DNA of 64,000 bases from Botryllus schlosseri (GCA_051294905.1 CM119381.1:11284001-11348000), one strand, 5' to 3'. Shown: positions 269 through 24,700, counted from the first letter of the stretch. Translations and numbers: made by a program. The notes: a model not told the origin generated them from the sequence alone.

Positions 269-388
269 AGCTTTTAGGGGGTCGATGAGTAAGAAAAGTT
301 TGGGAGCCGCTGATCATAATGCCACAGAAAACATTCCCATAAACACCGAACACGATTGTACTTTTCGCAAATAGTAATAGTACTTTAC

Positions 389-785
389 CACTGGATGGAT
401 CTTCAATGATATTAACAGTCACAAGAAGTTCGGGATCATTCATAGCATCAGTGAGCGATCCAGTGACATTTTCAACACTTTCGTCGTCATCAATGGGAAC
501 CTTCACTATTGACTGAATTTCATCTTCGCCTGTAAGAATTATTAACTTGCTGATACTTTAATATAACCAGAATCTGCACAAGGCAAGAATTACCAGGTTC
601 AAATACCAATTCCTCCTCGATTGGTTCTGCCTTTTCATCTGGAGTATCGTTTAGTCGGTACGGTTTAATGATTGAATCGACAGGTGTCTTCTTTGTTGTG
701 TCGCCGTGACGACCAAGAGTGATGTTTAAGATGACAGTGTCGTTATCTTCAACGTACGACAAATCTTTGACATATACTTTGGTTC
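389..785 (-). CDS. Calx-beta-like 23, class N (594-785, 389-529); gene probably continues beyond the window start
   Basis: LGRHGDT..YRLNDTPD; ends in a phase-1 donor G|gtaaag like its paralogues. Confidence 0.83.
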
Positions 786-3700
786 CTAGTGAAAAAAGTT
801 TCTTTGAATTCACTACCCCCGATCAATATTTCAAAACACTATATTTACCGTCAGATTCATCCAAGATTGTTAATGTTGTTTCAATGATTTCACCCAGTTT
901 TGCCAAAGTATCTTCAGCTAGATTTTTTGGTTCCACCAGCTCAAGCGTGAATACCTCTGGATTCTCGTAGATTTCGTCGTTCATGATTGATACGGTTACA
1001 AATTGTTCCGTTTCACCTAGATTTTTAGACATCACAAATCACATGTAGGCCAGCTCATTGCCTCATATTTAAAAATATATCGGGCATATTTCAATAACAA
1101 GTTTTGGAGGATGTTTTTTTTAAATTGACACTATCGTATTTTACAAGTCGTTACCGGGTTCAAACACAACATTCGATTCAGGATTCTTCTTCCTCTCCAT
1201 GAAATCATTATCAGAGTCGGCAGTTCCAGGCTTCGTGACAACGTAAACAGTCGTTTGATTGGACAAATCTCCTCTTCTTAATACGGTGATATTTACTTCT
1301 TTTTCATCCTCCATAACTGTGTAGCTATCTTTCTCGAATTCCACCACAGTCACTGAAAGCATATACATTCGAAGCTTGAAACATAAAATATAAAAACATA
1401 GAGATAGAATAGCGGAATAGTGTGGGATGATATACAAAAAAAGTTAGAAATAGCATATGTTTTGAAAAGTGATGATCTCCATGGTCGCCTTAGTTCATAA
1501 TTGAAGTAGTGTATTAGCAAAAATATCCGTAAATCAGTGTTTCTTGAATATTTTTCTGGCACGGAGCTGTAAATTTCATTTGGGTGATTGTGCGAACAGC
1601 CTAACTTTGAAATGTGGCAAGATGATGACTGAAAAAAGTCATCACTTCTTCTCAGTACTAACAATGGCCTGATATTGTCATCACTTTTGCTTCTCAGTCT
1701 ATTGTGAGCGAGATAAAGCAAATAAGGACTGATGTTTTAAAGGACAGTATAGTACTTTCAACAATGGCGTTTAATGAACCTCTTACAACTAGTCTGTTAC
1801 CTCCCAAGGGTGCACCCCAGGTTAGGAAACCCTGGCACAGACCATTGTGAATCCACTAAATTTACTATTTTCTCCAGCAGAGTGTATATTTGTCAGTCTA
1901 TTAGAAGTATTTATGGTATGGTCTGGAATTTACAACTCATATTAGTACTCCAGTAATATAGAATTATTTCAACTGCAACAGTGGACAACCAGCTGAACCC
2001 CCTACGCAATAAAATGGTGAAGTTGCTTACCTGGTTGATCAGTTATGACGACAACAGACTCATTCTTCTCGCCAATGTTTATTGGAACATTCATATCATT
2101 GTTTTCAGCCTGTTCTAGATAAACAACAAAACGTTCTTCATCTTCTGGCAGATTGTCTTTCTTGATTGGGACGAGAACGGAAATTTCTTTTTCACCTAAT
2201 ATAAGATCAAAATTAAACAAGTAGCCTTGACTGAAGATGGCTAAATCATACAAACAACAAATTGAAAAGGTTTATCTATAAATTTCGTAATGTAGTTTGT
2301 AAAGGAAAGTACAAACATGAAAATTGAGTGGTAACGGAACTAGTTTGTAATGCATATATCAGATAGTGCAGTATGATTTATTGCTGCAATAATATCAATA
2401 CAACAAGGATTATATTTATAAAGATGAGATTTTACGCTGAAGGTGTTGGTAAAATTGCTCTAAAATTACGTGATTCAAAGTCGTTTCACTATTATAATGA
2501 TAAGAGGGACACAACATGTAACAGTAAATAGATCTTGCAGGTCAAACTAGAAGACGAAGTGTAAATCAGGGTAAATGAAGCATCCCTTGGTCAATGTAAT
2601 CCAACAAACTCTAAGGAGGAGATATAGTTTCCTTGATTCCCATTTCCAAAATATACCCATACTCACTCGGCTTGAATAAGATATCAGAATCTTCAGTGTT
2701 TGGTCTTGTCTCAAAATCACTTTCATCGGCAGTGTCCGGTTTGGTTAGTAAACGAACTGTGGATTCGGTAGTGACATCACCAGAACGCACTACTGTCACT
2801 GTGACGTTCTGGGATTCGCTTGTTTCATACTTTGGTTTCTTGATACTGACAACAGTACCTGTACAAATAGAGTGTAATGCTACTTCGGTATTTTTTTTCG
2901 ATTCAGTCATTGGATTTATCTTCTATACTCATAGGTCAAATGAACAGTAGATATCTATAGGGGGAAGGTAGTCAGTAATAAACTGCTTCATTTTTCAGAT
3001 TGCAACTCCATGTTTAATGTTTACTCTAGTGGTGATCATTGCAGGAAACTACCAGCATATGTATTTGATAATATTATCATCTCAAGAACATGGCTATGTT
3101 ATAGCAATGCAGAAAGATAAGGGAATTTGAGAAGGAATCAAAGAATAACCTTTCAAGCGTCACTTGGCATATAATAGTGACAAAAATTAAACCTAGGGCT
3201 ATTACACACACCTGCATACACACACATATCGAGTGAGAAAATACAGTAATAATCAAATATCTACTATATTCTGAGACAGCAGATGGCAATAAAGCATAAT
3301 GCATGTACTTGCACAATCTGATAACTATACAAGTATACATATACCAGACACAGAAACTGGTCAGTAAGTTGGAGGAAAATGAATCTGGGTTATGACACAA
3401 TCTCATGATCTGCACAAAAGTCATGTGTCATGACAGCATTGTATTTTAGTGTCTACCACAATACTGATACCTTCATCTGTGTCTGGATCTTCAACGATGT
3501 TAACAGTTGCAGTCAATTTGGGATCGTTCATTGCGTCGGTCAATGACAGCGTAGCGTTTTCGACACTTTCATCATCGTTAATTGGAAATTTGACAACGGA
3601 AATGATTTCATCTTCACCTGTAGGAATTATAACCTTGATAGTAACGACATACTACTCAGATACTGGCTAGTTATGGTCCGTTCAAATGGTATTTTGTGTT

Positions 3701-6700
3701 ACAATAGTAAGTCCCACATCGTGATTCAGCTGTGGTAGTTGGTATTACTACTTAATTTCATTGTGTCATTCATCACACCCTTGTATACATACACACATTG
3801 CAGAATTACTTAAAGTTTGAATGGTCCAAGATCAATTGGGATGCATGAACAAGTTGCTTTAATGGAATTGCCGAAACTATGAAGTCTGTAAAAATATTGA
3901 CATCATTGAGAACTACTGAAAATGAAACTATAACTGAAATTGTGTTGTATCTTACTGTCCAATCGCTAGACTTGAATACTTTTCATAGATGCAAAAAATA
4001 GTTAATAAAGAAATCAACATGAAAACAAGCACATATTTACCAGGAGAAAATTTCAATTCCTCTTCAATTGGCTCTGGCATTTTGTCTGGACTGTCGTTCA
4101 GTTTGTATGGTTGAGTAATTGAATCAACTATGGTCTCATCTGTAGTGTCACCGTGACGACCAAGAGTTACATTTACGATGACAGTATCATTTTCTTCCGT
4201 GTACGAAAAATCTTTGATATAGACTTTGGTCCCTGCTCATAAAGAGGTCGATATAAATTTTCACATTGCAACAGAATTTCAAAACAGCACAGTCACCATC
4301 AGATTCATCCAAGATTGTGATCCTGGTTTCATTGACGTCACCCAGCTTCGCCGTGGTATTTGGTGCCAAATTGGTTGGTTCCACTAGTTCCATGGTAAAT
4401 GTTTCGGGTTTTTCGTAGACTTCATCATTTGTTATCGATACAGTGACTTTTTGTTTTGTGCCGCCTTCATTGTGAGAGAGCATTATAACAATGTGATCAT
4501 TGAGAAAGTATAAAGGAGACTATGGAAAATAAGTAGCCTACAAGCTTGATTAGAACTTGCATGGTTGAAAACAGAAGTAGTTTTAAGAACATGAACGAAG
4601 TTATGCAATAATATGAAGATTATAATTTGCATCAACCAGTTTAAAGTAATATGATTGATGTGGTTTCAACACAATCATAGTTATGTTTATTTGATCTGAC
4701 AGACATAGGCAAGAAATTGTGGTAAGGAAGAAAACTCTATCAATAAGAATCGCCTGAGTGATGTGATAGAAACTGACTATCAAATTATAAATTCAATTCA
4801 ATTATAGAAAATCTGTGCCTTCAATTCACCTGACGATAAATCAGCGCTGAAAATCTTCCTATTTTTAGGGCAAACAAAAATACGGATTTGGAGCTATACC
4901 GAAACATTCGCGATGGTCTCCAGGGTAATAAAGGTCAAAGTTTTACTGTGTAGTCATATTATGATATAATAAATGTTTACACAACCTCCTTCGAAGAGCT
5001 TATTGAAATTTCATTCAAAAAAGTTTTAGCAAATACATATATGACTTAACTGTTGGTTAGATATTCCAACAATCAACACGAAACAGCACACATTTACTTG
5101 CTCTTAAACTTTTACCTGGTTGAAAGACTACAACGCTTTCCAGATTCTTTACTTTTTCGGTGAAATCATCTGGTGCCTCAGCGGTGCCCATTTTAGTGAC
5201 TACATGAACTGTGGCTTCATTCGTCAAATCCCCGCTGCGCAACACAGTAACATCAACCTTTCCTTCATCTTCAATTACGGTATAATTGTCTTTTTCAAAT
5301 TCGACAACAGTCACTGAAACAATGGGAATTACATTAAATCCTAAATCCTTGAAAATCTAATGCAAGCAAACAATAACATCATAGCCCAGATTACTTAAAG
5401 TCATTAACAAACAATTGAGCAACCTTGATTATTATGAGTCACTGTGACGTATGATCGGAAAGTTTAATTCCAGACTCAAAAAGTATAACAAACAAATATT
5501 TTGAGCATGGCCGTACATCAGTTACATGCCATAAACCCAAATTCATGACCACACATTTAGTATTTGACTAGGAGATTGCGAAAATTCAGAATGATATAGC
5601 CTCGCGTTATCATGCAAATTAGAAATCCCACAAGTATGCAGCTTTCTTCAAAATATAATTTGTTGAAATTCTTACTCGGTTGATCAGTGATCAGAACTAC
5701 GGTTTCATTCTTCTCCTCGCAGATACTTATAGGAATATCGGAATTATCATTTGTGGGGTCTTTTAGATAAATGATAAAACTTTCTTCATCCTCTGGGAGA
5801 TTGTCCTTGGTAATTGGGACTGTGATGAATATTTGTTGTTCACCTGCAATAATTGAATAACTTTGGTGAATACTTCAATTCAAGTTTATTTTGATTTTTA
5901 CATATGAACAATAAATATGTGACTATATTTTAACAGTCAATATGCACAAACGATGTAATTGAAATCTAATTATTATAACATACAGATAAAAAAAAGAATG
6001 TAGCAAAGTAGGTGGAATCAATTCAAAATTAGATATTATAAAGTTGATAGCCAATTTACCTGGTTTGAATACGATATCTGATTCTTGAGTGTCTGATCTT
6101 CGTTCAAAATCACTTTCATCGGCAGTATCGGGTTTAGTTAGCAATCGGACTGTTGATTCAGTTGTGACATCACCATAGCGAACTACCGTCATCGTCACAT
6201 TCTGGTATTCGCTCGTTTCATACTTTGGCTCCGGGATACACACAACAGTGACTAGACATACAACAAAATGAAATAAAATATATAATAAACGATAATAAAT
6301 GAGTAGCAATTTCGAAGGCAGGGTCGAATCAAGTATTACTATCAAATGAGTAGGTTGAAAATTATTCAAGTGGTGTTATGTATTTGACATCTACAACATG
6401 AAAATATCATTATGGATCTACATTCTGAAGCCAAAATGGTTCAATTTCAAAAAAAGGTTTAATTTCTACACAAGTTCCGCTCTAAAACACCTGTGACGAT
6501 TCCCTTAAGAAAATGATATTATCGAATGTAAACATGGAATGGCAATTGCAACTACGTTCCGCTTCGTTGAGGCTGTATACAGAATTGTTTTGCGGCAGCG
6601 ACGGTAGGATTTCTGGCAATCCCAAATATATCTTCCAGAGCGCAGAATTCACTGATTCGGGTCTTGATCGGAAGCTACTGTCGCACTGATTCCGAAAATA

Positions 6701-9700
6701 TATCTTTAAAAATATAATCAGGCACTGGAACCCCCCTGAATTCGCCCTTCAAGTCTGCAATATCGGCATTGTCGGAACAATGCAAGAGCCGTAACTGGTT
6801 ATTGTGTGGCGAGTTAGCGTAGTGGCGTAATCCACAGCTGCAACACCAATGGGTTGCGGGTTCGAGTCCGACCGAGGTCGACTACAGAATTCCTACGTAA
6901 GTGTTATGGTCGTTGTTTTTCAGTCATCCAATTTTTCTGAACAATGCACATTTTAGATATTGAGGGTGATTTTCATCGAAGTCCAGAGCCTGACAATATT
7001 TTAATTTATATTTTCGGAATCAGTGCGACTGTAGCTTTCGATCAAGACCATATTCTGTGGGTTCTGTGCTCTGGAAGATAACTTTTGGATTGCAAGAAAC
7101 ACTACTGTCGCTGCCGCCAAACAATTCTGAATACAGCCTGAGCAAAGCGGAACGAAGCTGCAAAATCGGTTATTGCCATTCCATGTTAACATTCGATAAT
7201 GATAATAATCTACCCAAAAACTGTTCAAGTTGCAGCAGGATCAGGTCAAAGTAGAGGAGGCCTACTGAAATACCAAAAAAAGTTCTAATATATTAATCAC
7301 CTTTAAAAATGAAATCAGAAGTCAAAAAATATTAGATTCAAACCGAAAAAAATTCACTCATGTACATTGTCGATCAGTACAATTCTGCTTCAATCATATG
7401 TCATTCGACATGTAGCAGTACCTTGATCTGAATTTGGATCTTCAACGATGTTCACAGTCACAATAATCTCCGGATTATTCTTCGGATCTGTTATTGATAT
7501 TGTGGCATTCTCCACGTTTTCATCGACCATAATTGGCATACGCAAGGTGGCCATAATTTCATCTTGACCTGAGGAAACAATGTGTATACTATAAATATTA
7601 TTCGAAATCTTAAAGTAGGTATTGTACCTGGTTCAAACACCATTTCTTCAACAGATTCTGGCGCATCATATGGACTGTCGTTAAGTCTGTTTGGTTTAAG
7701 GATTGCATTAACGGGAGTTTTTTCAGAAGTATCTCCTTTGCGACCAAGTGTAATATTAAGGATGACGGTGTCGTTATCTTCCACGTATACAAAGTCTTTA
7801 ACGAACAACTCTACTAAAAAGGAATAAAAAGGATAGGCATTGTGATGATTTGTAAAAAAAACACTTGTTTACCCTCAGCACCGTCTGTTATTGTAACTTC
7901 GGCCTTGTCCGGGCCTCCTAATTTTGCTGGTGTGTCGATGTCCGTATTTTTGGGCTCTTTCAGCTCGACAGTGAATTTTTCCGGTTCCTCTTTGATATTG
8001 TCTTTTGTTATGAGAACAATCGCATTTTGTTTGGTGCTTCCTAGATAACAAAATGAATACACAGTGAGGATAATTGTTGGGGCTCGAATTGAGAGATATT
8101 TCAAAAAAATACAGTCAATATCACTGTACTTTATCGATAATGTGATATTTAAGTTTCACTATTCTGTCATACTCGTTATTTCTGAATAGGGCTTCCTAGT
8201 TGGTTCACTGAAAAAGTGAAATGTAAGAACCAACTAAGCGTGGAATAATATTTTCCGGTAGGAAAATCCATTACTGGAGAATATCTTGACACATTCCAGG
8301 TGATGTAGGTGATAATGTCCACCCTCTTTTACGATGTCGAACGAAAGCGGGACCAAAAGACTTCGATGTGCACTGTTATAAATATGTACCGGTATTAGAA
8401 ACTAATCTTTCACATCCCGAATTGTCCATTTCAAGAGATAACATAATTGACTATCTGATTCTAGGAAGCCAGATATCTGTTTCGTTTATTTTGAACGTAT
8501 TCCCTGAAACAAAGAATGTCAGTACGTTTTTTTCACATTCACACACCAGGTTCAAAAACGACGAGAGATTCCATGATTTTTGTCTTCTCTGTGAAATCCC
8601 CAGGACTTTCTGCACTTCCGGGTTTCGTAACAATATACACCTTGGTCTCGCCGGATACATCGCCGCTTCGGATGACAGGAATTTCCACTTTTCTCTCAGT
8701 TTCAATAACTTCAAAGCTATCATCCGCAAACTCAACAATCGTTTCTGAATCAAAAGATGGTATGGTTTTGATGGATTTGTAATTTCCGTTTTTCCAATAC
8801 ACACGGATGTTGGACACATGATAAGATATCTAGTAGGTGAAAAAAGTGTCATGTTTTCTGATTTTTTTTTTGCCAAAAATAAAACAGATTTGCAACCAAA
8901 AAACTCCAGTCTAAATGAAAATGATCAGGCTTTCTTTTAAGTAAACTTTAAAATAATCAGAATAAATCTAAATCTTTGAATGCAGCAACGAGAGTCAATG
9001 TGCGGAAAATACATACAAGCACTGCTACCTGCAAGCTGTGCGCATGCGCAATTGCGCAGTGCTGACACGGTCCCTGCCCACAGAAAAGAAAGCTTTTTTT
9101 TAGTCGTTACACACTGTTGTCCAAGGGACCGCGGGCAGTGAGTTGGTTAGTGTGTGAATTAGTGGGAACATCGCATACAACAACCGGTATTTATATTTTT
9201 AGTTTAATATTAATGAAGTAAGATATAGGTTATAAATCAGTAAATAATTCAATTCAATTTATCAATTATAAATCAGTACCACGTACCATTGTCCATCTCA
9301 TCCTTGGTCATTACCACAACATGAATTGATGGATTATTAGGGTCCGATTCATCTGATTCAATCCCAAGTTTCTCGAAATCTTCCGCATCTTTGAGTGGAA
9401 CCTTCATCACGACTACTGAATCTGCGTCTCCTGGAATTTTGATTTGTTACATACTTCGGAATCAAAACTGAGATGATATATCACTTACAAACTATCATAT
9501 ACAGCACATAACAGTTTTAATACAGCATATTATTGGTGATTAACTACATTAACAATGATTTGCTGTTATGGGATTTGATCGAACATAGGAGCATGAACAG
9601 TGCACCTGCACACTAACTGGATAATTGATGACATAAAAATATGTTTAGAGATTTTTAATTCAGTACACTCTGATGGATTATTGTCATAAATGCATCTATT

Positions 9701-12700
9701 TGGCTGAAAATTAAACTTCAAAATGTCACTGAAGTTGTGCATGTCAAGGAAACTATTCAAATGTTTCTGCATGACAACGTCTGAAAACTTACAAACTTTA
9801 AATTTCTTTAAATTTCAGCAAATCGTTTTTACTGGAGACATATTTGTAAATGATAAATAAAGGGTCTTAGTCAATGTCACTTAGCAAAGAACAAATCTTG
9901 AATTTTATTTACCTAAGATTATGGATATACAAAACTATTCAAATGCGAACCTGGTTCGAATGAAGCCACGTCTTCCAAAGTTCTTTCAGGATCATAGTCT
10001 GTGTTTTCGATTCCATACTTTACGACATCAAGTTTCATGGGGACATCGGCTTTTTCTGAAGTAGGCTCTTTTCTGCCCACAGTTATTGTTAGCAAAGCAA
10101 CATCATCTTCGATGACACGATCAACATCTTTAATAAAGTATTCTGAACGAAAATAAAATGCATTATGTAAAAACCGAGAGTAAAGCAGACAGAAATTGTG
10201 AAGTGCACAATAACAGAGTAAAGAAGTATCTGCACTTATGATTATTCCATTTTTTATAAAAATTCACACTCTTTCAGGTGTTAAGGAGTTTTTGTTATCA
10301 ACTGATATGTCCTAACCTGTATGTATGTATACTTGATATTATTTTCTTGTAAACTCTAGCATCTGCCCTAAATGTAACATTTGAATATCTATATTCATTG
10401 ATGCTATTACAAGGGTCATTATTGTGACTTAAATTTCAGCAATATGAATATACTGTTTGATAAATTCCACAAAGTAGCAGACAAATTCTGAGAAAAAGTA
10501 GAAGCTCTCCATAACTGACAAGACCACATCTACAAAGTAGGTAATGGCGTTATTTAGAGTACTGGTTTTTCGGTTCACGTAAATTCATATCATAGAAGCT
10601 TGATATTTTCTTCAATAGTGACACAATTTTAGGGCCGGAAGGTCTACAAATTCTAATATCGCTATTGGCAATAACTGTCAATGCCAAAAATATATTTACG
10701 AATGTTACAGCCCAGATAGTTACTTGGTGGATCCATGATTACAATAACAGATTCGTTGTATCGACCGATCTTTATAGGAATGTTGAAGATGTCATTCTCA
10801 GCATTTTCAAGGAACACAATAAATTCCTCTGCATTCTCCGGATCTTTCTCTTCAATTATTGGTATAATTATAGATGTTTCATTTTGACCTGAAAAATAAA
10901 AACAAAAATGAAGTATACTCGATGACCTAATTTAAACAGGCATAACATAATTACCAGGCTTGAATGTGACCATCGAAACTTCTGTGTTGGGTCGCTTTTT
11001 AAAATCCGTATCGTCGGCCGTGTCTGGTTTCGTGATTACAAATACTTGTGAATCTGATGTGACATCTCCGGATCGTGTTACGGTCAGTTCAACTTCATCA
11101 CCTTCAGTTACTACATATTTGGGCTCTTTCATGTTCAGTACTGTTCCTATTGTAGTAAATAGTGAAAGTCATGTTATTATGGATGGTTAGGTAGGAACTG
11201 GGCTATTTCAATTCAGTACAGATCAATATCCTAATAATTTCATCTTTACAAAGCACCTCAATGTTGTCGAAACGATATGGAGTAGTCTTTCAATCAAACA
11301 CCCACCTGGGCCTAGAAAATGTGGTTAAGAGGCACGAACACTGAATTAAGAATAATAGAAGATAACATAAAAAAAATGATAAAAAATAAGTGACATGTGT
11401 CGGTTAGTGCAATAGATATGTGAGATCGTGGTTGGTTAATCTTGAGTGCATCACAGTATTCATTCAGCAGAATGTGTTGATATTTTACCTTGAGTGTGGT
11501 GACTGTCTGATTGTCGGTCAAGTACTGTTCAACAATCACTGACCGTGATACTAGTGGACACCCATTTTTAAAAAATCATCAATTCTTCAGATAATCTCAG
11601 AATATTTTGAAATAATCTAATCCCTAATACACATTCCGGTGCTTATTCTAACATTAGTGCCGATATGTGGTGTTAATCCTTAATCAAATGATTGCAGAAT
11701 TATGTAAAATGATCAAAGCTTCACACTCACCATTGAAATCTGGATCATCAATATCAGTAATGGTAACAACGGCCTGCTCTTTTTCACCCAATTTTATAAA
11801 CGAGTCATCTTTGTTGACAGGATTTTTCAGCAGGACGAGGAAAGTCTCATCGTCTTCACCCAAGTCGTCAGTAATGATGGTAATATCAACCATTTTCACT
11901 TCCTCGCCTGCATAGCATTGAATAGAATTCACTAATGTAACTTATAATTGCTGTCAGAGCTTGTGTTTACCAGCCAACATCTCGTATATTAATCGAATTT
12001 GCTTGTCAAAAATGAAACTGACATTACTGAGAACGAGGGGGTAAGAATGAGGTTATATTGACGGAGACATTGATATGAAATCTACTTTGTGCAGAGATAT
12101 TTACATAAAGAATAGGTAGACATGGTCATTTACCTGGCTGGAATACCACATTCGATACCGGCTTGTCAGGACGCTCAACAAAATCTACATCATCCTCTGC
12201 ATCGTTCTCTTCCGTGACAAGAGTCACTGAAGATGTTCTTGAAAGATCACCCGTTCTCACCACCGCAATGGAGACATTGCCTTCAGTCTCGGCAACGGTA
12301 TATTCATCTTCTTTTAACTCGACCATGGTCTCTGTAAGGGAGAAGCTGAAATTGAACTGTTCACTCCTCAAATACATTTTCACTAACCTGTGTCATTTTT
12401 GGTTGCTGAAAGGCGTGGTTTTGTAAGAACCACTATGACAGGGTTTTCCCCAGATGGATTTAATAGCTTGATTTGCATTGGTTCTGATGTGTTGAATTCA
12501 TCCAGTGGTACTAGCAGTATTACATCTTCCTCATTATCATCTGTAATTGAAATTTGTAACACATTGGGACATCAAAATCACAACAGAGACAAGATTAAAT
12601 TATTTTCTTTCCATAGAAAATGTAAAAGACTGCTATGCATTGATATAACGGTTCATGGTAACCAATAGCCAATACAAAATAAATGCTTGTTATGCAGCAA

Positions 12701-15700
12701 CTCTAGTAACAAAATGTAAGACCAAAGTTTCTGTGATATAATATCCTAAATATAGCATACGTTAACTGGTAAGCATTCCCACTGTTGAATTAGTTGTATT
12801 TTTTTATTGGAATTTACCAGATATAGCATGCAGGATCAGCAAATTTTAAACGCAATAAGATTTAAATCTTCCACGTCACAAAGCAGACAAACTAAAATGT
12901 ACTCATGAGCATTGGGAGGACATCAAAATTGAATTCCGGTAGTATCTAAATGCTTTTGTCAAATATATGTATCATGTGTGACAGACAAACCTTCTTTACC
13001 TCAGTGGTCTTGAATCAAGCTTAATGGATTCAGATTTGTTATTGGAATCGACAATTATGTCTATGATAGTACTGTGCTGTTCAGTAAAATATCTATTAAC
13101 TGTACAACACGACATAACATCATACCCTCAACGAATTGTACATTCTTGTCTGGATCTTCAATGTCCTCTTGAGTGGGTGTCTCTGTATCCGGATTTAATA
13201 TTACAGGTATATCTTCTTGTATGAGACCCTCCCCATCTCTAATGACTGTGAATTCTAATTTGACATCTTCATCCATAATTTCATACATGCCATCCTTCAC
13301 GTTGATCACTGCAAATAATCCAACACAGTTTCAGTTATGTAGCAGTACTAACTAGAAAATGACTATACCTCGGTCAGGTGCAGGATCTTCTTTCAGGAAA
13401 ACAGTCACTGTAATTTCCGGATTATTGTTTGGATCCTTGAGCGATATCGAGACATTTTCAACAGTTTCGTCCGCATTTATCGGAAGGTCGATTGTGGATG
13501 GAATCTCTCCTTGTCCTGTTCAAGCAGCATAAGAGAATGTGGCAAACAAGGATGATATGGCAAGACTGCTGGCAAGAACAGTGTATAAATGACTTTTTAT
13601 TCGTATACCAGATATTAGGTAATAAATAACATCTCTACTGATGTGTTGTAGATGAGAGACAGCGTCTCTTTCTGGGCACATTATTAAAAAGTAACCAATT
13701 TTTCAAGAAATCTCCTGGGCATAAAAAGCACTAGAGCCATGATGCAAAAAAATATTGAAATCATGACATAAATAGTATCCACACATATCTAGTTTTCTTG
13801 TCACTTGTCACAGTTGTGTTGAAGAATATTGTATTGATAGTCTGTAAATTTTGTATGTTACTCAGGCACCAAATCATATAGCACTGTCGCGCTGCACGAG
13901 TTATGAGTGAGAGATGTTAATTACAGAAAACTGAAAATCAAGAGCCAGACATGGAAAACCCATCATACACTTCCAAAATACTAAAGAGAATGTATGCATA
14001 ATAAGCACAAATAATACTGTATGCTGTAAAGTGTGTAGCTTTGATATTGACATACTATTTATAGGTACCTTCTTCAAATAACAATTCCTGCACAATAGGC
14101 TGTGGACCCTCATCTGGACTGTCGTTCAATTTATATGGCATGACAGTAAGTTTTACTGGTAAGTCTTCGCTGATATCTCCTTTGCGGCCAGTAGTAATAT
14201 TAACCGTTACAACATCATCATTGGTAGTATATGCCACATCTTTGATGAAGACCTCTGATGCTGTAATAGGAATTCAACCATAATTGAATTGATCTACTTT
14301 TAAAATATATTTCTTACCGTCTGGTTTGTCCAGGATTTTAACCGTTGTTTCATTGATTTGTCCAATTGCTAGAATGAAACTGTCTGTCATGTCTTCCGGC
14401 AGTACAAGTTCTACGGTGAAGCTTTCAGGTTCCTCATTGGTATCATCGTTTACAATGGGTATAGTTACTGCTTGCTTTGTCTCATCTAAAAAAAATCGTA
14501 ACTTCATAAAAAAAGAGGTCCAAAACTAAGTGTTTAATAGACTCTTGGTATCCAGAAAATGGTTTATAGAAGCACGCACGGTAATGTACTAGGTTACAGA
14601 TTCACTGTTTCCCCTCTTGTCAGAGACATCATGTCAAATGATACCACAACTTTAATGCATCCCACTATGACTATAAACAATGCACTTGCAAGCATGATTA
14701 TCAGGTATTATTTAATCCAACTTAATGTTTATCATCCATATGGATGTTAATATAATTGATCAATCACATAACAATTTTTAAAGATATGATTCGAAAATCG
14801 AAATAATGTCACAGCGTACTGAAGAATTCTGTCAAGATTTAGGACTATTCCCGCTGTCAATTGTTACAGACAGATATGTTCACGATGATTGTCGATGGTA
14901 GTCAAATGCAGGCCCAATAACATTTGCACCTTATAAACTTCTTTCATGATCTTGCAACATTAGAATAGTAATTTAATCTATTATTACCAGGTTTGAATTC
15001 AACCATAGCTGGTGGTGCCATCTCTCTCTCTGTAAAATCCTCAGGCGATGTAGCCGATCCTGGTTTGGTAAAAACATAAATCTTTGTTTCCTCTGATAAA
15101 TTGCCGCTACGAAGGACATTAATCTCGACTTCCTCATCTTCTTCCAAAACTGCGTAGAGTTCTTTCTCAAATTCCACAACCGTTCCTGATATTTGCAAAG
15201 TAAATTTATATATGAACAAACGACACAATCGTACCCACCAAGGTTGCCAGTGTATTCGGCACTTGGTGAATTCGGCCCTTGGAGAAGTTTGCATTAAAAT
15301 GTATTATTATCAAGTGATTTGTCAATATTGTACGGAGGTCAAGATATGCGTAGATCACTTGATCACAGATTGCATAAGCGCGGGAGATAATGCGACGCTC
15401 ACGCGTGGTCTGGTCTGCACGTTATTCGTAATTTGACGGCGTGAGTGACGGGCGTGAGTTTTGAGAAGATGCATCTTTGCGTTGTATGTGAGATAGAAGT
15501 TTTGGAAGATCAAGCGGCGCTTCTTCGCTCCATGACAACCAAGTGTTCCCCGTGATGTCGACAAATGTTTCCGATGAACACGTCAACATGTATAAAAGTC
15601 AAAATAAATTGTTTTTTGCCTTTGGAGAGACCGATACTAGGGTTGGGGGAGGGGGGATATTAGGGTTGGGGAGGAGATATATCAGGGTTGTAGGTGGGCT

Positions 15701-18700
15701 AGGCTCAAAGTTGGGGTTAGGGTATCCCACGATTAGGGTTAGGAAAGGGGGGCAGTAGGGTTGGGGGAGAAGGGATATTAGGGTAGAAGGTGGGTTTGGG
15801 TCAAAGTTAAGGTATCTCAAGGTTAGAATTGGGGGAGGGGGATATTAGGGTTGGATGTGGGGGATAATAGTGTTGGAGGTGGGTTAGGGTTAAAGTTTGG
15901 TAGGGTATCCCGATATTAGGGTTGTGGTGTCCCAAGATTACGAGATCTACCACGTCACGTAGAACGTTCCTATTTGAGAATATTCATTCATATTAAGTGC
16001 ATTATTTCTAATGCAAAATTGTTCAAGAGCCGATTCCTCCAGGGGCCGAGCTCACCAAGGGCCGAATTAACCAAGTCCCGAGTTCACTAGTAATCCCAAC
16101 GAAGATACTCTAAACTTTGTAATTTGGAGAAATTTACTCCCCTCACATTATTCATTATGTTCACATATCTAGGTTTTTTTAAAAACTAGTGTGGTGAACT
16201 AAAACGGTAATTATACACAAGTTCCTTTCCCCTTCGAAATCCAGGTTAAGTAAGTTTCATTGCTATTGAGCTGTTATCATGGTTGATAATGACCATTGCT
16301 GTTAAATATCATTCATATAGAAACTTGACAACCGTTTCAATTGGGTTGCTAACCAGTCACAAACTTATATCCTACCATTTGTTTCTGGACCATCTTCATC
16401 GGTAATGGTGACAATGGCCTGATCTTTTTCACCCAGTTTTATTGACGAAACATCTTCGTTGCTAGGATTTTTCAACATGACGATAAATGTTTCATCGTCC
16501 TCGTCAATGTCATCGTCAACGATGGAAACGTTCACAGTCTTCTCATTTTCTCCTTCATTGAAGAAAATACCCATTTTTATCAATTCCACTGCCAGATTAC
16601 GACCTCAACATGAGTTTACATGCAAAAGTAAGAAATGCTGCTTGGCCTTTTTTTCAAGCTCAAGAATGATACAGCTACACATGACAAAAACAAAGATAAA
16701 AGTTACATTACTATGGTAGAGGTATCATATCTATCTTACGAGAATATAATCACATGGATTTAGAAGGATATATATGAGTAGAATAAATCAATTACCTGGC
16801 TTGAATACCACACGAGATTCCAATCTGTCAGGTCGCTCAACAAAATCTTCACTATCCTTTGCATCATTTTCTTTGGTAACAAGTGTGACCGAGGAAGTTT
16901 GTGTTAGATCACCCGTTCTCACCACCGGAATGGAGACAATACCATCAGATTCTGCAACGGTATATTCGTCTTCTTGCAACTCGATAATGGTATCTGTAAA
17001 GGGAAAAATGAAATCAAACCGTTCATGGAGTAAAATTCTTAAGTATATGTTCGGTAACCTGTATCATTTTCGGTTGTCGGCAGGCTACGTCTTGTATAAA
17101 CTATTATGACGGGATTTTCGCCAGAAGGATTTAATAGTTTGATCTGCATTGGTTCCGATGTGTTGAATTCTTCTACAGGTACAAGCAGCATTACATCTTC
17201 CTCGTCGTCATCTGCAAACATACTTGTTAATGCATTGAATGCATAAAAACAGAAGGTGGAAATGCAGTTTTATATCTGTCTCCACCATCCAGATATTTGT
17301 GAGAGGTACAGACAAGTTCAATGAACCAGCACCAACATTTTCCTCTTAACGCCAACTCAAAGTGAAGAGAACATGGGGTGGGAAACCGTGGCCAGAAATT
17401 TTGCAATAGTATAGGAATCCCGAACCATACAACTAAAGTAAAGTATAACCTATATTGTTGGCCAGTATCACATCCGCGAAAATGTACATCGTACATTGAG
17501 TATGGAATCCATCTCACCGTAACCATCCTCTACTTCAAAATTCAATACTGTGTGCTGCAATAAAGTGTGGTCTCACAAAATATTCTGGAGGTAATCGCGG
17601 ATTAAAAATACCATAAACGAAACTGCAACTTGCCAAACGTAGATGTTTGAGACATAGCAGCAGCATTGATGAAATAATAATAAGTATCATACCAGGATAT
17701 TCAAAGATATATAAAAAGACCTAATAGCTCAATATACACACTTCATTAAAATAATATTGCAAAATATTGCAAGATATGCAGATGCAATTCGTTCAAAAGT
17801 ATAGTAACACTCTTAAAACCTCCATTCCACGACTTGACTGATTAACTGCAGTCAAGTTTGAGTAAAGCTTCAAGTATTGTCTCATGTTAGAAGTACCTTC
17901 AACAAATTGTACAGTGAGATCTGGGTCATCAATTTCCTCTTGAGTTGGTGTTTGTGCAGCTGGATTTAGTATCACAGGAATACCTTCATTTGGGAGATCT
18001 TCTCCTTCTCGTACAACAGTGAATTCTAATTTGATATCCTCGTCAATATTTTGATATGTTCCATCCTGTACTTTGATCACTGCAAAATTCCAGGATTCGA
18101 AAATCTGATTTGGGGATTTAGTAGATGATTTTACCTCGGTCAGGTACAGGATCTTCTTTCAGGTAAACGGTAACCGTTATTTCTGGATCGTTCTTCGGAT
18201 CCTTTAATGATATCGATACATTTTCAACAGTTTCCCCATCATTTATGGGAAGATTGACGGTGGATGGAATTTCTTCTTGTCCTGAACAAGATGAGAGACA
18301 TTATGAATGAGCAAGGAAAATAATGTATACTTGCCACAGAAATTTTTATGTTATTAATAATGAAAAAACGCTCACATTACTTGTAATCAACGATAACGCC
18401 GTTGGAATGTTACAAAACAGAGAAAGAGATTGAACTAGGTTTCAAACCAGTATCAATATCGAAGCGATTTCACAAAGAACTAACTGGCTTTCATTCCAAT
18501 GATGGTAAATATTTTTAAAAGTCATCTCAATATATACGGTACCCTTCATAGTTCTAATGATACAAAATTATTTTCAATGAATTCAAGCGATTTTGATGAT
18601 ATTGAAGACAAACATTGAGGACATATCAAAGACTGCTTGCGTAAAATTAAAATTGGTGATCATTAGGTAGTAATAACAGAGATGAAATCTCAGGAGATAT

Positions 18701-21700
18701 ACAGAATATTAGGCAGTAAAATCTCATTGAAATAGATAACTGTAATCAAGTATAGCGAAAAGTAAATTCATTCTTGATATCCTCGCACCTGATGGAATGT
18801 AAGTCAACTTCATCAGCTAACCTATATATCCAAAGGTAAAATGCAAAATGCTATTGGAGATACTCATTCACATGCAGATACTATTTTTACATGCCTTCTT
18901 CCAATAGCAGTTCCTGTACAATGGGCTCCGGAACCTCGTCAGGACTATCATTCAATCTGTATGGTATGACTGTAACTTTCACTGGCAAGTCTTCAGTAAT
19001 ATCTCCTTTGCGGCCAGCAGTAATATTGACAGTGACCACGTCATCGCCGATAGTATATGCTACATCTTCAATGAACACTTCTGATTCTGTAATAATAATA
19101 CGAATCGATTCACAAATTATTCATTTGTTTGCAATTGATTTATTTGTGCCTTCAGGTTGGTCCAAGATCTTCACTGTTGTTTCATTGAGTGTTCCAACTA
19201 TGGGTCTGGAAATGTCCTCTGGGTCTTCAGGCAACAAAAGTTGGACAGTGAAGCTTTCGGTTTCCTCAACATTGTCATCATTTACAATAGGTATTGTGAC
19301 TGATTGAGTGGTTTCACCTGTGATCCAGAAGCAATAAAAGTCTCTCTTACAATGTTTGCTTCCAAACTTAGTTTCTTGCAACTGATTAAAATTAGTATTA
19401 AAAAAAATATGACTCGACACCGATGTAAAATAATCAAAATAGTGTGATCAAAATAGTCGCTAATGATACTCGAATCGTAATAGGACTGGCGAATTATAAG
19501 GAGGGTAAAGCTACTGAAATAAGAAAACGATTGAAAACTTCACATTCCCATTGTTTTCACGTCCATTACGATTTCGATATATTAGCCATTAGATCTATTA
19601 CCTGGTTTGAACTCCACCATGGCTGGTGGCGTCTCTCTTTCTGTAAAATCCTCAGGCGAGGTAGCCGATACCGGTTTGGTAACGACATAAATCTTCGTTT
19701 CCTCCAATAAATTGCCGTTACGAAGCACATTAATAACGACTTCCTCATCTTCTTCCAAAACTGCATAGAGTTCTTTCTCAAATTCCACAACTGTTTCTAA
19801 AATTTGGTAATGAATTATATTGTAAGATATATATGGAGCAACAAGGATCATTCCACATGAACAAATGACGCAATAGTACCCACCTGGCTAGTCCTAATTT
19901 GGTAATTCAAACAATTTTCCTTCCTCACACCCTTCATAACATCTGTGACATTATTTTATCAAAATACTAGTGTAGCAAGGCAAAACGATAATATTATATA
20001 AATTCCTTTCCCTATAAAAATCAAGGCAAACTAACTTTTTTGCTGTTGAGCTTTTATCATGGTTGACCAATGACCATTGTTGTTGAATATCATTCGTATA
20101 GCAACTTGGCCACCCCTGTAATTGGGTAACCAACAAGCCAATAACTTTATTCCTACCATTTGTTTCTGGATCATCTTCATCGGTAATAGTGACAATGGCC
20201 TGATCTTTTTCACCCAGTTTTATTGACGAGTCATCTTCATTGCTGGGATTTTTCAACATGACGATTAACGTTTCATCATCCTCGTCCGTGTCATCATCAA
20301 TGATGGAAACGTCTACAGACTTCAAATTTTCACCTACATCACAGAAAATACACTCACTAAGCTATCAACTTAACTTTGCGTGCTATAATAAGAAATGCTT
20401 TTGGCCTTGCTTTTCAAGCTCAATTACGACACAGCTCCACACGACAAAAAAAGAGGAAATTTGTTTTGCTGTGATATGGATACTTACATTGAGAGAATAT
20501 AACTGCATGAATTTAGTCGGCGAGATGTGAGTAGAATAGGACATTTACCTGGTTTGAATACCACACGAGATACCAATTCCTCTGGTCGCTCAACAAAATC
20601 TTCTCCATCCTTTGCATCATTTTCTTTGGTAACAAGTGTGACCGAGGAGGTTTGTGATAGATCACCCGTTCTCAGCACCGGAATGGAGACAATACCATCG
20701 GATTCCGCAACGGTATATTTGTCATCTTGCAACTGGATAACAGTATCTGTAACGTGACGGATGAAATGAAACCGTTCATGGTATTTACAATTTTTACAAC
20801 AGTGTTTACAATTATTTTATTCTTACCTTCTGGTTCGTCCAAGATCTTCACTGTTGTTTCATTGATTTTTCCAACTATTGGTCTGGAAATGTCAGTTGAG
20901 TCTTCAGGTACCAAGAGTTGAACAGTGAAGCTTTCAGGTTCCTCGTCAATTTCATCATTTACAACAGGTATTGTTACTGTTTGTGTAGTCTCGCCTGTGG
21001 TACCGAAGCAATATAATCAAAATGTGCGCTCACAAAGTCTCTCTGGTAGTGTTCGATAAATTTTTCCCCATTGTTTCCTAATTTTGTTTCACAGAACTGA
21101 TTAAAATCAGTTATACAAAAAAATTGTAACGCTACACCAATGTAGAACAACTAAATTAAGATAAAATTAAAGGAATAGTATCAGTATATATATGTATATA
21201 TGTTTATTAGATATGAGTGGAAATAAGCTATACTAAACACATAGTTCAGCCAGTTTTAGAAATGTGTGATCAAAATATTGCTATTGATAGTTGTTTCAAT
21301 GGGACTAGCACATTATAATAATGGTAAAAGCTACTTGAATTAAAAAAACCAGTGAAGATTTCACACTCAAATTGTTTCTATGTCCATTACGATTTTGACA
21401 AATTGGCCGTTAGATCTGTTACCTGGTTTGAACTCCACCATAGCTGGTGGTGCCATCTCTCTTTCTGCAAAATCCTCAGGCGATGTAGCCGATCCTGGTT
21501 TGGTAACGACATAAATCCTTGTTTCTTTTGATAAATTACCGCTACGAAGCACATTGATAACGACTTCCTCGTTTTCTTCCAAAACTGCATAGAGGTCTTT
21601 CACAAATTCCACAACTGTATCTAATATTTGAAGAGAAATTATATTGTATATATATTGAGCTACAAGGATCTTTCTACCTGAACAAAGGACACAACAGTTC

Positions 21701-24700
21701 CCAACAGGCTACTCCTAATTATGTAATTCAGAATATTTTCCTTCCCTCACACCATTCATTATATCCATATGTCTGTGACATTATTTCATCAAAATACTAG
21801 TGTGGCAAGGTAAAACGATAGTTATACACCAATTCCATTCCCTATCAAAATCTAGGTTAACTAACTTTTTTGCTGTTGAGCTTTTATCATGATTGGCCAA
21901 TGACCATTGCTGTTGAATATCATTTCTTATAAAAACTTGGCAACCCCTTTAATTGGGTAACTAACAAGCCAACCCCTTTAATTGGGTAACTAACAAGCCA
22001 TCTTTATTCCTACCATTTGTTTCTGGACCATCTTCATCAGTAATGGTGACTATGGCCTGGTCTTTTTCACCCAGTTTTATTGACGAGTCATCTTCGTTGC
22101 TAGGATTTACCAGCATGACCATAAAGGTTTCATCATCCTCGTCAATGTCATTGTCAATGATGGAAATGTCCACAGTCTTCTCATTTTCACCTTCATCACA
22201 GAAAATATATATTATTATAAATTTTACTGCCACATAAAGATATCAACTTAAGCTTGCATGTAAGAGTAAGAAATGTTTTTGGCCATGCTTTTCAAATTCA
22301 TCAATGACACTGCTGCACATGACAAACAGAGAGTAAATTCAAGTTACTTTGATATGGATACCTACATAGTGAGAAAATAATTACATTGATTTAGACGGCG
22401 AGATGTGGGTAGAATAAGTCATTCACCTGGCTTGAATACCACGCGAGATACCATTTCGTCAGGTCGCTCCGCAAAATCTTCGCTATCCGTTGCATCATTT
22501 TCTTTCGTAACAAGTGTGACCGAGGAGGTTTGTGAAAGATCACCCGTTCTAACAACAGGAATTGAGACAACACCATCAGACTCCGCAACGGTATATTGAT
22601 CTTCTTGCAACTCGATAACGGTATCTGTAATATGATGGATGAAATGAATTCGTTCATGGCGTTTACAATTTTTAAAATATTGTTTACAATTACTTCATCC
22701 ATACCTTCTGGTTTGTCTAAAATCTTCACCGTTGTTTCATTGATTTTCCCAACTATTGGTCTGGAAATGTCAGCAGAGTCTTCTGGCACCAAGAGTTGAA
22801 CAGTGAAGCTTTCAGGTTCCTCTTCGCTCTCATCATTTACAATAGGTACTGTTACTGTTTGTGTAGTCTCGCCTGCAGTACCAAAGCAAAATAATCAAGA
22901 TGAGCGCACTCAAAGTCTCTCTTGAAGTGTTCAATAAATGTTTTCCTAGTCCGGTCAGTTCTACAACTATATGAGCAAAATAGTCACTTATGATACTCGA
23001 CTCGTAATAGTAATATCGATTTATAAGTAGTTTAAAGGCTACTTGAAAGAAAAAATATTGAAGAGGTCACACTCACGTTGTTTCCATGTCAATTACGATT
23101 TTGATACATTAGTCATTAGATCTATTACCTGGTTTGAACTCCACCATAGCTGGTGGTGCCATCTCTCTTTCTGTAAAATCCTCAGGCGATGTAGCCGATC
23201 CTGGTTTGGTAACAACATAAATCTTCGTTTCCTCTGACAAGTTGCCACTACGAAGTACGTTAATGACAACTTCCTCATCTTCTTCCAAAACTGTGTAGAC
23301 TTCTTTCTCAAATTCCACAACCGTTGCTGTTGTTATTAATTCAGAATAATTATGCTCATTGATTTAATTGGAGCTTGTAGTACATGGGTGGGCAGTCCTG
23401 ATGCATGCTCGAGCAGCATATCGCAAAAGTGGGATTTAAAAGAGCCACAGCGCAAAAAATCAAAGATATTTACTCAATGAACTGTATAATATTTGTTAAT
23501 GATTTTTGTTACGTGGTGATACTGCAAGTCTCTACCGGGGCTGCAACTTGTTTGAAATTAGGCCGATATGACCTCAAAGGAGTGCAGCGCAGTTCATTCA
23601 AGTGTTGGCTGGTCAAAACTGAACAATACTTTCACGTTACAGATTTCGTCGCGGAATAAAATGACTCACAACAGTATGCTATACTGAAAATATAATTCGT
23701 GCAATACATGTTTTATTCCACTATAATGCTTCTGGGACTTCCGTTACTCAACTGCGGTCAAAGAATAAACCCTGCGAGTGTTGCTTGCTATAGACTTCAA
23801 TACAAATGTAAGCTTCATATGCACCATTGTTTACCCGGAGTTCAACGTGACCTGTGCTATTGTGATTAGTGATCAAGCTCATTGTTGATATAGTGGCATA
23901 TTAATGAAGTAATAAAGTAAAATAATTTCCTGTGTATTTGATATAGCCTATGGTTTCAGTCATTCAAAAAGCAGGTTTTGTGATTTTAATTCCAAGCAAC
24001 CTTTCACGGGCCGCATCGAATAGCTTCGCGGGCTACATTTGACCCGTGGGCCGCACTTTGCCCAGGTCTGCTCAAGACAATTAGCAGGATATGCTGAGTT
24101 ATGCAGCAACGATGTAAGGATTCTGGGCCAAGGAATGCTTTTGATATAGTATTGAAAAAAAGAGTGAATTTCTGGACATAAATTCAGATATCTTATTTAA
24201 CATGTCTGAAGTATTATTACCTGGCTTGTCGTTTATCAATACGACGGATTGGTTTTTGTCGCCAACCTTTACCGGGATACTTGAGATACTATTCTTTGGA
24301 TCATCCAAGTAAAGAATAAATTGCTCCGTAACTTCATCCTCTTCGTCGTTGGTGATTGCAATAGGTACTGTCATTTCTGATACATCTTTTGGTAGAAATA
24401 CATATATATTAAAATTTATTTCAAGATTTATTTTCCAATATTAACCAACTTGGCTCAAAAGTCACGATAGATTCTTCTGTATCTGTTTTTTCTTCAAAAT
24501 CTTGCTCGATTGCAGTATCGGGTCGAGTCAAAAGTCGTACAGTTGAAGTGGGAGATTTATCTCCCAGACGGATAAGTTTTACTAAAACTTCAGTGCCCTG
24601 AGTAGTTGTATATTTCGGATCTTTGATTTCCAGAGTCGTTCCTACAAATAGAACATTTATTTTTTAATTCAAAATGGTCAGTAGCAGTAGCAAACAACAA

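What the first reader, a model, noticed from the sequence alone, without database searches (positions are those of the whole stretch)
389..24641. Calx-beta array has a higher-order code: S-E-D-E-D-E-N-Q-D-E-N-Q-D-S-N*-E-N-S-E-N-S-E-N
The 23 domains fall into five classes with characteristic exon sizes (S 192/165-168, E 198/168, D 198/177, N 186-192/141-147, Q 183/153). They form nested blocks: (E-D)x2 with period ~1.7-1.8 kb, (E-N-Q-D)x2 with period ~4.6-4.8 kb, and roughly (S-E-N)x3 with period ~3.4-4 kb. This resembles titin or nebulin super-repeats and implies successive block duplications of different unit lengths; it may set a periodic binding or flexibility pattern along the rod.
Basis: seen in the sequence. 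Interest (0 to 1): 0.7.

Follow-up and report, generated by a model that had tools for sequence, protein, structure and literature searches.

The report
Block-duplicated Calx-beta domain array
A giant secreted matrix-protein gene carries a string of 26 calcium-binding-type beads of six sequence kinds whose repeating order is real and was built by copying blocks of two to four beads at a time, a known way for such proteins to grow rather than a new kind of code.

Summary
On the minus strand, 46 exons (389-24641) form one open 8,181-nt frame. It encodes 23 Calx-beta-type domains, each split into two phase-1 exons of the stated sizes and in the stated class order. Transcript contigs confirm seven junctions between 18 and 24 kb.

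A domain tree recovers every class. N* is a sixth class with its own counterpart in another species. The array runs three domains past the window start (S-E-D), giving 26 domains.

The blocks are true en-bloc duplications:
- The E-D units align at 82% over 1.7 kb, introns included.
- dS is coherent within blocks: 0.2-0.6 for E-D, 0.72-0.86 for E-N-Q-D, and above 1 for S-E-N.
- dN/dS is 0.11-0.34 where dS could be estimated.
- The 80-nt E-to-D intron is a chimera of the E-to-N and Q-to-D introns, so E-D arose from E-N-Q-D by loss of N-Q.

A distant relative (about 50% identity) keeps E-N-Q and S-N*-E-N with the same exon sizes. It lacks S-E-D-E-D at the front and S18-D26 plus the EGFs after N17. 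Sub-blocks are therefore old, and block number is lineage-specific.

Classes differ at calcium-ligand positions. A titin-like periodic function is untested. This is a new member of a known kind. The scan had already noted this stretch, and a 17-copy array in the same gene.

The parts
24221..24641 (-). d1, class S (exon A 24450-24641, exon B 24221-24385)
   Evidence: most divergent S (42-46% to other S)
22705..23326 (-). d2, class E (A 23129-23326, B 22705-22872)
   Evidence: 88% aa identity to d4
22014..22624 (-). d3, class D (A 22427-22624, B 22014-22190)
   Evidence: 85% to d5 and 87% to d9
20827..21620 (-). d4, class E (A 21423-21620, B 20827-20994)
   Evidence: 4B-5A junction seen in X8 contig
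20157..20746 (-). d5, class D (A 20549-20746, B 20157-20333)
   Evidence: junctions 5A-5B and 5B-6A seen in X8
19150..19796 (-). d6, class E (A 19602-19796, 195 nt; B 19150-19317, GC donor)
18135..19086 (-). d7, class N (A 18895-19086, GC donor; B 18135-18281)
   Evidence: 81% to d11
17059..18079 (-). d8, class Q (A 17897-18079, B 17059-17211)
   Evidence: 71% to d12; Q clade 100/99
16376..16993 (-). d9, class D (A 16796-16993, B 16376-16552)
14318..15185 (-). d10, class E (A 14988-15185, B 14318-14485)
13369..14260 (-). d11, class N (A 14069-14260, B 13369-13515)
12388..13308 (-). d12, class Q (A 13126-13308, B 12388-12540)
11731..12331 (-). d13, class D (A 12134-12331, B 11731-11907)
   Evidence: 67-69% to d3/d5/d9
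10724..11146 (-). d14, class S (A 10955-11146, B 10724-10888)
9287..10142 (-). d15, class N* (A 9951-10142, B 9287-9430), a class of its own
   Evidence: pairs with the relative's N* at 99/96 support
7873..8744 (-). d16, class E (A 8547-8744, B 7873-8040)
7422..7813 (-). d17, class N (A 7628-7813, 186 nt; B 7422-7568)
   Evidence: 81% identical fragment P0002 in a closer relative
5676..6251 (-). d18, class S (A 6060-6251, B 5676-5843)
4297..5313 (-). d19, class E (A 5116-5313, B 4297-4464)
3471..4232 (-). d20, class N (A 4041-4232, B 3471-3617)
2031..2858 (-). d21, class S (A 2667-2858, B 2031-2195)
849..1352 (-). d22, class E (A 1155-1352, B 849-1016)
389..785 (-). d23, class N (A 594-785, B 389-529). 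The array continues below the window with S24-E25-D26 (locus L004, exons 9566-9757, 9248-9412, 8224-8421, 7395-7562, 7086-7283, 6857-7021)
19437..22946 (-). Youngest duplication: 19437-21067 aligns with 21260-22946 at 82% over 1,694 columns, introns included
   Evidence: dS 0.38 for both E2/E4 and D3/D5
11731..19796 (-). Two E-N-Q-D blocks (d6-d9 and d10-d13), offset 4662-4826
   Evidence: dS 0.72, 0.86, 0.85, 0.72 for the four pairs
389..6251 (-). Two S-E-N blocks inside the window (d18-d20, d21-d23)
   Evidence: 67-73% aa identity position by position; dS 1.06 or more
7422..11146 (-). S-N*-E-N block (d14-d17), kept in the same order in a distant relative (L007)
22625..22704 (-). 80-nt E-to-D intron (second copy at 20747-20826). 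It is chimeric: the 5' part resembles the E6B-to-N7A intron, the 3' part resembles the Q8B-to-D9A intron

Best explanation
The array is the first Calx-beta region of one giant secreted matrix or adhesion gene on the minus strand. Upstream in the window lie VWD, VWA, EGF and WxxW modules. Downstream lie a long EGF region and a second Calx-beta array.

The array has six sequence classes. Their order records history: a heterogeneous core whose sub-blocks E-N-Q and S-N*-E-N predate a deep species split was lengthened in this lineage by en-bloc tandem duplications and one internal deletion.

Every domain is two exons and every intron is phase 1. Unequal recombination between any two introns therefore keeps the reading frame.

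Inferred order of events:
1. S-E-N-type triplets multiplied (dS saturated).
2. E-N-Q-D duplicated (dS about 0.8).
3. One further E-N-Q-D copy lost N-Q through an intron-to-intron deletion, giving E-D.
4. E-D duplicated again (dS about 0.2-0.6).

All copies where dS could be estimated remain under purifying selection. Copying blocks rather than single domains keeps neighbouring domains dissimilar.

Function is inferred, not shown. The likeliest role is a calcium-stiffened extracellular rod in which:
- D domains carry a near-full set of calcium ligands,
- S and E carry a partial set,
- N, N* and Q carry a degenerate set.
For: - Gene model and open frame.
- Transcript junctions.
- Tree of 26 own and 7 relative domains: every class forms one side of a branch. 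Support is E 93/94, N 81/85, N* 99/96, Q 100/99, D 83/76, S 54/0. Five label changes are needed, which is the minimum; shuffled labels need 20.1 on average.
- Introns align between E-D units (82% over 1,694 columns). Short introns align between the E-N-Q-D blocks.
- dS is coherent within blocks and tiered between them. dN/dS is 0.11-0.34 for the pairs where dS could be estimated.
- The E-to-D intron is chimeric.
- Relative locus L006 is collinear with window 31295-25048 at 50-79% identity, then goes directly to E-N-Q.
- Relative locus L007 has S-N*-E-N with the same exon sizes and phases.
- The relative's N next to Q is sister to d7+d11 at 98/97, so that block duplication postdates the split.
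- N-type domains occur only in this gene in the whole genome.
- S/E/D halves match NCX1 CBD1 in the PDB. The table of ligand-equivalent positions differs by class.
- Neighbouring domains are 23-43% identical and no two neighbours share a class (p = 0.005).
- An independent DNA run, X5, covers both E-D units.
Against: - The relative is known only from two contigs with an unknown gap between them. Its full array, and the direction of gains versus losses, are therefore not established.
- S is recovered with weak support only (54/0).
- dS rests on about 120 codons per pair and is saturated for the older blocks.
- A stretch of about 85 nt (23129-23213 versus 21423-21507) is identical but for one base between exons 2A and 4A. 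This points to gene conversion, which can blur ages.
- The N and Q ligand assignments depend on a weak alignment. The Q to S/E/D profile match has only 76.6% probability.
- No structure prediction, binding or calcium data were obtained.
Confidence: 0.75

Rival explanations
1. A functional super-repeat in the titin or nebulin sense. On this reading the period of the blocks is selected to match a periodic partner, or to place flexible joints at fixed intervals along the rod.
For: Equivalent positions in different blocks are more alike than neighbours. E-N-Q and S-N*-E-N are kept in order, with the same exon sizes, in a relative at about 50% identity. Classes differ at calcium-ligand positions. 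All pairs with estimable dS show dN/dS 0.11-0.34.
Against: Unit lengths are irregular (2, 4 and 3-4 domains) and copy numbers are low. The orthologous locus in the relative lacks S1-E2-D3-E4-D5 at the 5' end. It also passes from N17 directly to a second-array-type domain. Conserved order is expected from plain inheritance, without any selection on period.
Confidence: 0.12
2. Concerted evolution. On this reading the classes are kept alike by gene conversion between non-adjacent domains, so the apparent blocks and ages do not record duplication events.
For: Exons 2A and 4A are identical but for one base over their last 85 nt or so. One 68-nt run of identity crosses the spliced exon junction. D9 is closer to D3 and D5 than to its block partner D13.
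Against: Homology extends through introns and across domain borders for 1.7 kb. The E-to-D intron is a chimera of two other introns, which is a footprint of rearrangement, not of conversion. dS is even across the four members of the E-N-Q-D blocks. Relative domains nest as expected for duplication after the split.
Confidence: 0.08
3. Assembly artefact: the repeated blocks are collapsed or expanded repeats of a misassembled region.
For: Run X8 shows no contigs on exons 2B, 3A, 3B and the 5' part of 4A.
Against: The copies are 67-89% alike, not identical, and there are no N runs. An independent DNA run, X5, covers all 30 bins of 18001-24000 with contigs inside both E-D units. Four runs of another sample hold 95-96% of the sampled words. 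Transcript junctions fit the model.
Confidence: 0.02

Closest known systems
Multi-domain block duplication in repeat proteins (nebulin 7-module and titin A-band super-repeats; survey by Bjorklund, Ekman and Elofsson 2006, PMC1553488)
   Same: Repeats grow by copying several domains at a time, often in the middle of the array. Domains at the same position of different units are the most alike. Symmetric-phase exons make this possible (for the paper's abstract; for this array).
   Different: This array has three different unit types with only 2-4 copies each, rather than one regular unit repeated many times. Block number differs between species. No periodic partner is known. The domain family is Calx-beta, not Ig/FN3 or nebulin modules.
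Sponge aggregation factors (Grice et al. 2017, PMC5400394)
   Same: Both are secreted proteins that combine Calx-beta arrays with VWA or VWD. In both, nearly all introns are phase 1, domains are built from regular exon modules, and there are internal repeats covering exons and introns at about 85% identity. Domain content changes quickly between species.
   Different: In the Amphimedon factors each Calx-beta domain spans three exons and the domains share only about 23% identity. Here each domain is two exons, with classes 67-88% alike. The Wreath domain that defines the family was not looked for. The organism is not known to be a sponge.
Calcium-binding domains CBD1 and CBD2 of the Na/Ca exchanger NCX1 (PDB 2DPK, 2FWS, 3US9, 8SGI)
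   Same: S/E/D half-domain profiles match CBD1 at E 1e-5 to 1e-7. The acidic motif of the B exon and the D-F pair of the A exon lie on the exchanger's calcium-ligand positions.
   Different: The exchanger domains are an intracellular regulatory pair, not an extracellular array of 26. The N, N* and Q classes have lost most ligand-equivalent acidic residues.

Membership tests
Calx-beta domain (Pfam PF03160) | Match to the family profile above its curated cut-off of 27 bits | tested here: met
   Applies to S/E/D. A-exon halves alone score 34-46 bits (d22, d19, d16, d9, d3). B halves score 26-30 bits.
Calx-beta domain (Pfam PF03160) | The same profile match for classes N, N* and Q | tested here: not met
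   No Pfam hit at E up to 1 for ten N, N* and Q half-domains. Whole spliced domains could not be submitted. Profile-profile comparison links N to S/E/D (96.6%, E 5e-10), N* to N (97.8%) and Q to S/E/D only weakly (76.6%, E 2e-5), all collinear.
Calx-beta domain (Pfam PF03160) | Acidic calcium ligands at the positions known from NCX1 CBD1. The ligand list (E385, D421, D446, D447, E451, E454, D498-D500) is taken from my knowledge of the CBD1 structure papers. | tested here: inconclusive
   Acidic residues at 7-9 of 9 positions in D, 5-7 in S and E, 3-5 in N and N*, and 4 in Q. This comes from alignment only; no binding was measured.
Titin/nebulin-type super-repeat | Domains at equivalent positions of different units are more alike than neighbours | tested here: met
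   67-88% identity between equivalent positions against 23-43% between neighbours.
Titin/nebulin-type super-repeat | One regular unit of fixed length repeated many times | tested here: not met
   Units of 2, 4 and 3-4 domains, each present 2-4 times.
Titin/nebulin-type super-repeat | Super-repeat organisation conserved between species | tested here: inconclusive
   Sub-blocks E-N-Q and S-N*-E-N are conserved. Whole blocks are missing at both ends in the relative's contigs, and the middle of its array was not recovered.
Titin/nebulin-type super-repeat | A periodic binding partner | not testable with these tools
   No partner is known.
Sponge aggregation factor | Calx-beta modules bounded by phase-1 introns, together with VWA/VWD | tested here: met
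   All 45 introns between the 46 exons are phase 1. VWD- and VWA-like open frames lie upstream on the same strand; they were identified by eye from motifs, not scanned.
Sponge aggregation factor | Wreath domain | not tested

The most novel reading that the evidence does not exclude
The class order may be a positional code of calcium-site grades, with D carrying a full site, S and E a partial one, and N, N* and Q a degenerate one. Such a code would set which inter-domain joints are stiffened by calcium. The conserved sub-blocks E-N-Q and S-N*-E-N would then be functional units, for example hinges or docking sites. Three of the classes would be Calx-beta derivatives so far seen only in this gene lineage.
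Probability: 0.15. Interest if true: 0.6.

Novelty: new member of a known kind. Interest (0 to 1): 0.4.

Why it matters
This is a clean, datable example of how a giant extracellular protein grows. Two-exon, phase-1 domain modules allow any intron-to-intron recombination to add or remove whole blocks in frame. The footprints are still readable here: alignable introns, a chimeric intron and tiered dS.

It also defines three divergent Calx-beta-like classes (N, N*, Q) that Pfam does not recognise as half-domains. In the library search they were found only in this gene and its relatives.

Finally, it gives a concrete hypothesis about graded calcium sites along the rod that can be tested with a few recombinant domain pairs.

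Tried and rejected
- **Protein-atlas look-ups.** Queries with N and Q half-domains gave only sub-threshold, unrelated hits or none.
- **PDB search with the N profile.** Nothing below E 0.3.
- **Exhaustive library search with the N profile.** It returned five exon-sized fragments from relatives, plus two bacterial-looking repeat proteins (P0005, P0006). I set those two aside after a Pfam scan.
- **Word-based homologue searches.**
  - The D A-exon profile found only two D26-like fragments, 92% and 83% identical.
  - The Q B-exon profile found nothing.
  - The S A-exon profile found only the relative's own frame on L007.
  - The middle of the relative's array was therefore not recovered.
- **Contigs of the closer relative.** Four contigs from SRR25569784 (P0002, P0007, P0008, P0009) and one from SRR25569776 (P0001) could not be fetched as DNA.
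- **Raw RNA reads.** Runs X13 and X17 laid no read on 18001-24000, which is no test of expression.
- **The 2A-to-4B joint in X8.** It is not proof of exon skipping, because the A-exon ends are nearly identical.
- **Assembly artefact.** Rejected; see the rival explanations.
Full report
**Observation**

Six-frame open frames that resemble each other lie almost only on the minus strand between 270 and 24663. Pfam scores them as halves of Calx-beta domains: profile positions 5-70 in one frame and 67-119 in the next.

I ran a chain search over AG/GT(GC) sites with frame bookkeeping. I then corrected five boundaries by homology among paralogues. The result is 46 exons, all introns in phase 1, and 8,181 nt with no stop.

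Spliced contigs of run X8 reproduce seven of the predicted junctions between 18135 and 23329. Two of them belong to introns with GC donors, after exons 6B and 7A.

The order is not a chance arrangement. None of 100,000 permutations of the labels reaches the observed successor entropy or the observed number of repeated 3-mers and 4-mers. No two neighbours share a class (p = 0.005).

**Extent and setting**

The window is G000:C11:11284001-11348000. Below its start the array continues with S24, E25 and a D-like D26 (198/165 nt). Calcium-binding EGF exons then begin. The array therefore has 26 domains and both starts and ends with S-E-D.

Upstream in the window the same strand carries WxxW, EGF, VWA, VWD-like and lectin-like frames. 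These were read by eye from motifs. The WxxW and EGF calls also appear on the orthologous contig.

About 30 kb further down lies a second Calx-beta region with 17 copies of a 1,092-nt unit.

**Classes**

In a maximum-likelihood tree of the 26 domains, every class forms one side of a branch. Support values:

| Class | Support |
|---|---|
| E | 95/97 |
| Q | 100/99 |
| N | 88/86 |
| N plus N* | 90/80 |
| D core (d3, d5, d9, d13) | 85/95 |
| D with d26 | 46/4 |
| S | 49/5 |
| S core (d18, d21, d24) | 90/89 |

S is thus the only class that is recovered but poorly supported.

Half-domains of N, N* and Q get no Pfam hit at all. Profile-profile comparison still places N with S/E/D (96.6%, E 5e-10) and N* with N (97.8%). 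It places Q with S/E/D only tentatively (76.6%). All three alignments are collinear over more than 90 columns, and these classes share the two-exon phase-1 layout.

In the whole genome the N profile matches only the six copies in this gene. In 1.84 billion representative proteins it finds only exon-sized fragments from relatives.

**Block duplications**

DNA self-comparison shows 19437-21067 aligned to 21260-22946 at 82% over 1,694 columns. This alignment is continuous through exons 6A, 5B, 5A and 4B against 4A, 3B, 3A and 2B, with their introns.

The two E-N-Q-D blocks align at offsets 4662-4826. That alignment runs through the exon pairs joined by short introns. E22-N23 aligns with E19-N20 at offset 3447.

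Pairwise dS falls into tiers that are even within a block:
- 0.22-0.58 among E2, E4, E6 and among D3, D5, D9.
- 0.72, 0.86, 0.85 and 0.72 for the four pairs of the E-N-Q-D blocks.
- 1.06 or more for S18-E19-N20 against S21-E22-N23.
- Saturated for all the rest.

dN/dS is 0.11-0.34 in the blocks where dS is measurable, so these copies have been kept as coding sequence.

The 80-nt intron between E and D in both E-D units is a chimera. Its first 25-40 nt match the donor side of the E6B-to-N7A intron. Its last 50 nt or so match the acceptor side of the Q8B-to-D9A intron. The E-D unit therefore descends from an E-N-Q-D copy that lost N and Q by an intron-to-intron deletion, and it was then duplicated. 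This also explains why D3 and D5 are closest to D9, and E2 and E4 closest to E6.

**Other species**

Contig L006 (Logan, SRR23343704) is collinear with window 31295-25048 at 50-79% protein identity through the EGF and WxxW exons. About 600 nt after the last WxxW exon it continues with E, N and the first exon of Q. There is no counterpart of S1-E2-D3-E4-D5.

Contig L007 from the same sample carries S, N*, E and N. Their exon sizes are 192/165, 198/150, 198/168 and 192/147, all with phase-1 AG/GT boundaries.

In the joint tree the relative's domains fall inside the expected classes:
- N* pairs with d15 at 99/96.
- Q groups with d8 and d12 at 100/99.
- The N next to Q is sister to d7 plus d11 at 98/97.

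So the six classes and the local orders E-N-Q and S-N*-E-N are older than this split. The E-N-Q-D duplication is younger than the split.

After N, L007 goes on to a domain that is 56-60% identical to the unit of the second array. It is not an S domain. This locus therefore lacks S18 through D26 and the EGF region at that point. Because the middle of the relative's array was not recovered, I cannot say how long it is or which lineage gained or lost.

Fragments from a closer relative match d11 (83%), d17 (81%) and d26 (92% and 83%).

**Function (inferred)**

Profiles of the S/E/D halves match the calcium-binding domain CBD1 of the Na/Ca exchanger. The invariant D-F of the A exon, and the invariant D, E, E, F and the final I-x-D of the B exon, fall on ligand positions. 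The ligand list is recalled from the CBD1 structure literature.

Counting acidic residues at the nine ligand-equivalent columns gives the following:

| Class | Acidic residues of 9 |
|---|---|
| D | 7-9 |
| S and E | 5-7 |
| N and N* | 3-5 |
| Q | 4 |

The relative's domains follow the same class pattern.

The likeliest role is a calcium-stiffened extracellular rod or spacer whose joints differ by class. Copying blocks instead of single domains also keeps neighbours at 23-43% identity. Low neighbour identity has been argued to protect tandem domains from misfolding together (Wright et al. 2005, from memory). None of this was tested.

**Comparison with known systems**

Growth of domain repeats by copying several domains at once, often in the middle of the array, is the common mode described by Bjorklund et al. 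(PMC1553488). Nebulin and titin are the regular extremes.

Sponge aggregation factors show the same toolkit: Calx-beta with VWA/VWD, 154 of 155 introns in phase 1, internal exon-plus-intron repeats at about 85% identity, and fast change between species (PMC5400394).

This array is therefore a new and unusually legible member of a known kind, not a new kind of organisation.

**Verdict**

The duplication reading is supported. The functional periodicity reading is unsupported so far.

Noticed in passing
window 19087-19149 and 18282-18894: Two neighbouring introns (after exon 6B and after exon 7A) have GC instead of GT donors. The paralogous introns after 10B and 11A have GT. Spliced contigs of run X8 use both GC donors.
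   Followed up: yes
window 20827-23329: Run X8 is transcript-like and its contigs differ from the window by 3-6%. It has a contig joining a 2A/4A-type exon end to 4B. It has no contig on 2B, 3A, 3B or the 5' part of 4A, and its long upstream contig stops at 23196, close to where 2A and 4A become nearly identical. The cause may be an allele with one E-D unit fewer, exon skipping, or divergence above the 95% filter.
   Followed up: partly
window 23129-23213 versus 21423-21507: The last 85 nt or so of exons 2A and 4A are identical but for one base, while the rest of these exons differs by about 20%. This looks like a gene-conversion tract or a recombination hot spot.
   Followed up: partly
window 4-312: The first 300 nt or so of the window lie in the intron below exon 23B. 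They match dozens of places on many contigs of the genome at 71-84% identity, so this is a dispersed repeat.
   Followed up: no
window 15633-15883: A G-rich degenerate 22-nt minisatellite lies in the 1,190-nt intron between d9 and d10. It accounts for the GC-skew peak in 14001-16000.
   Followed up: no
window 25000-60400, minus strand: Upstream exons of the same gene include two WxxW-type frames, several calcium-binding EGFs, at least four VWA-like and several VWD/C8/TIL-like frames, and a C-type-lectin-like frame near 60084-60371.
   Followed up: partly
G000:C11:11233039-11251500 (loci L009-L011): The second Calx-beta array of the gene has hits every 1,092 nt for 17 copies, two domains per unit, only 30-46% like classes E and D. 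In the relative's contig L007 a domain of this type directly follows S-N*-E-N.
   Followed up: partly
Logan contigs of SRR25569784 (no DNA served): In a closer relative, an N*-like frame (48% to d15) is followed by one Calx-beta domain and then EGF frames. Two different D26-like frames (92% and 83%) occur in the same sample. This suggests a paralogue, a second haplotype or a mixed sample.
   Followed up: partly
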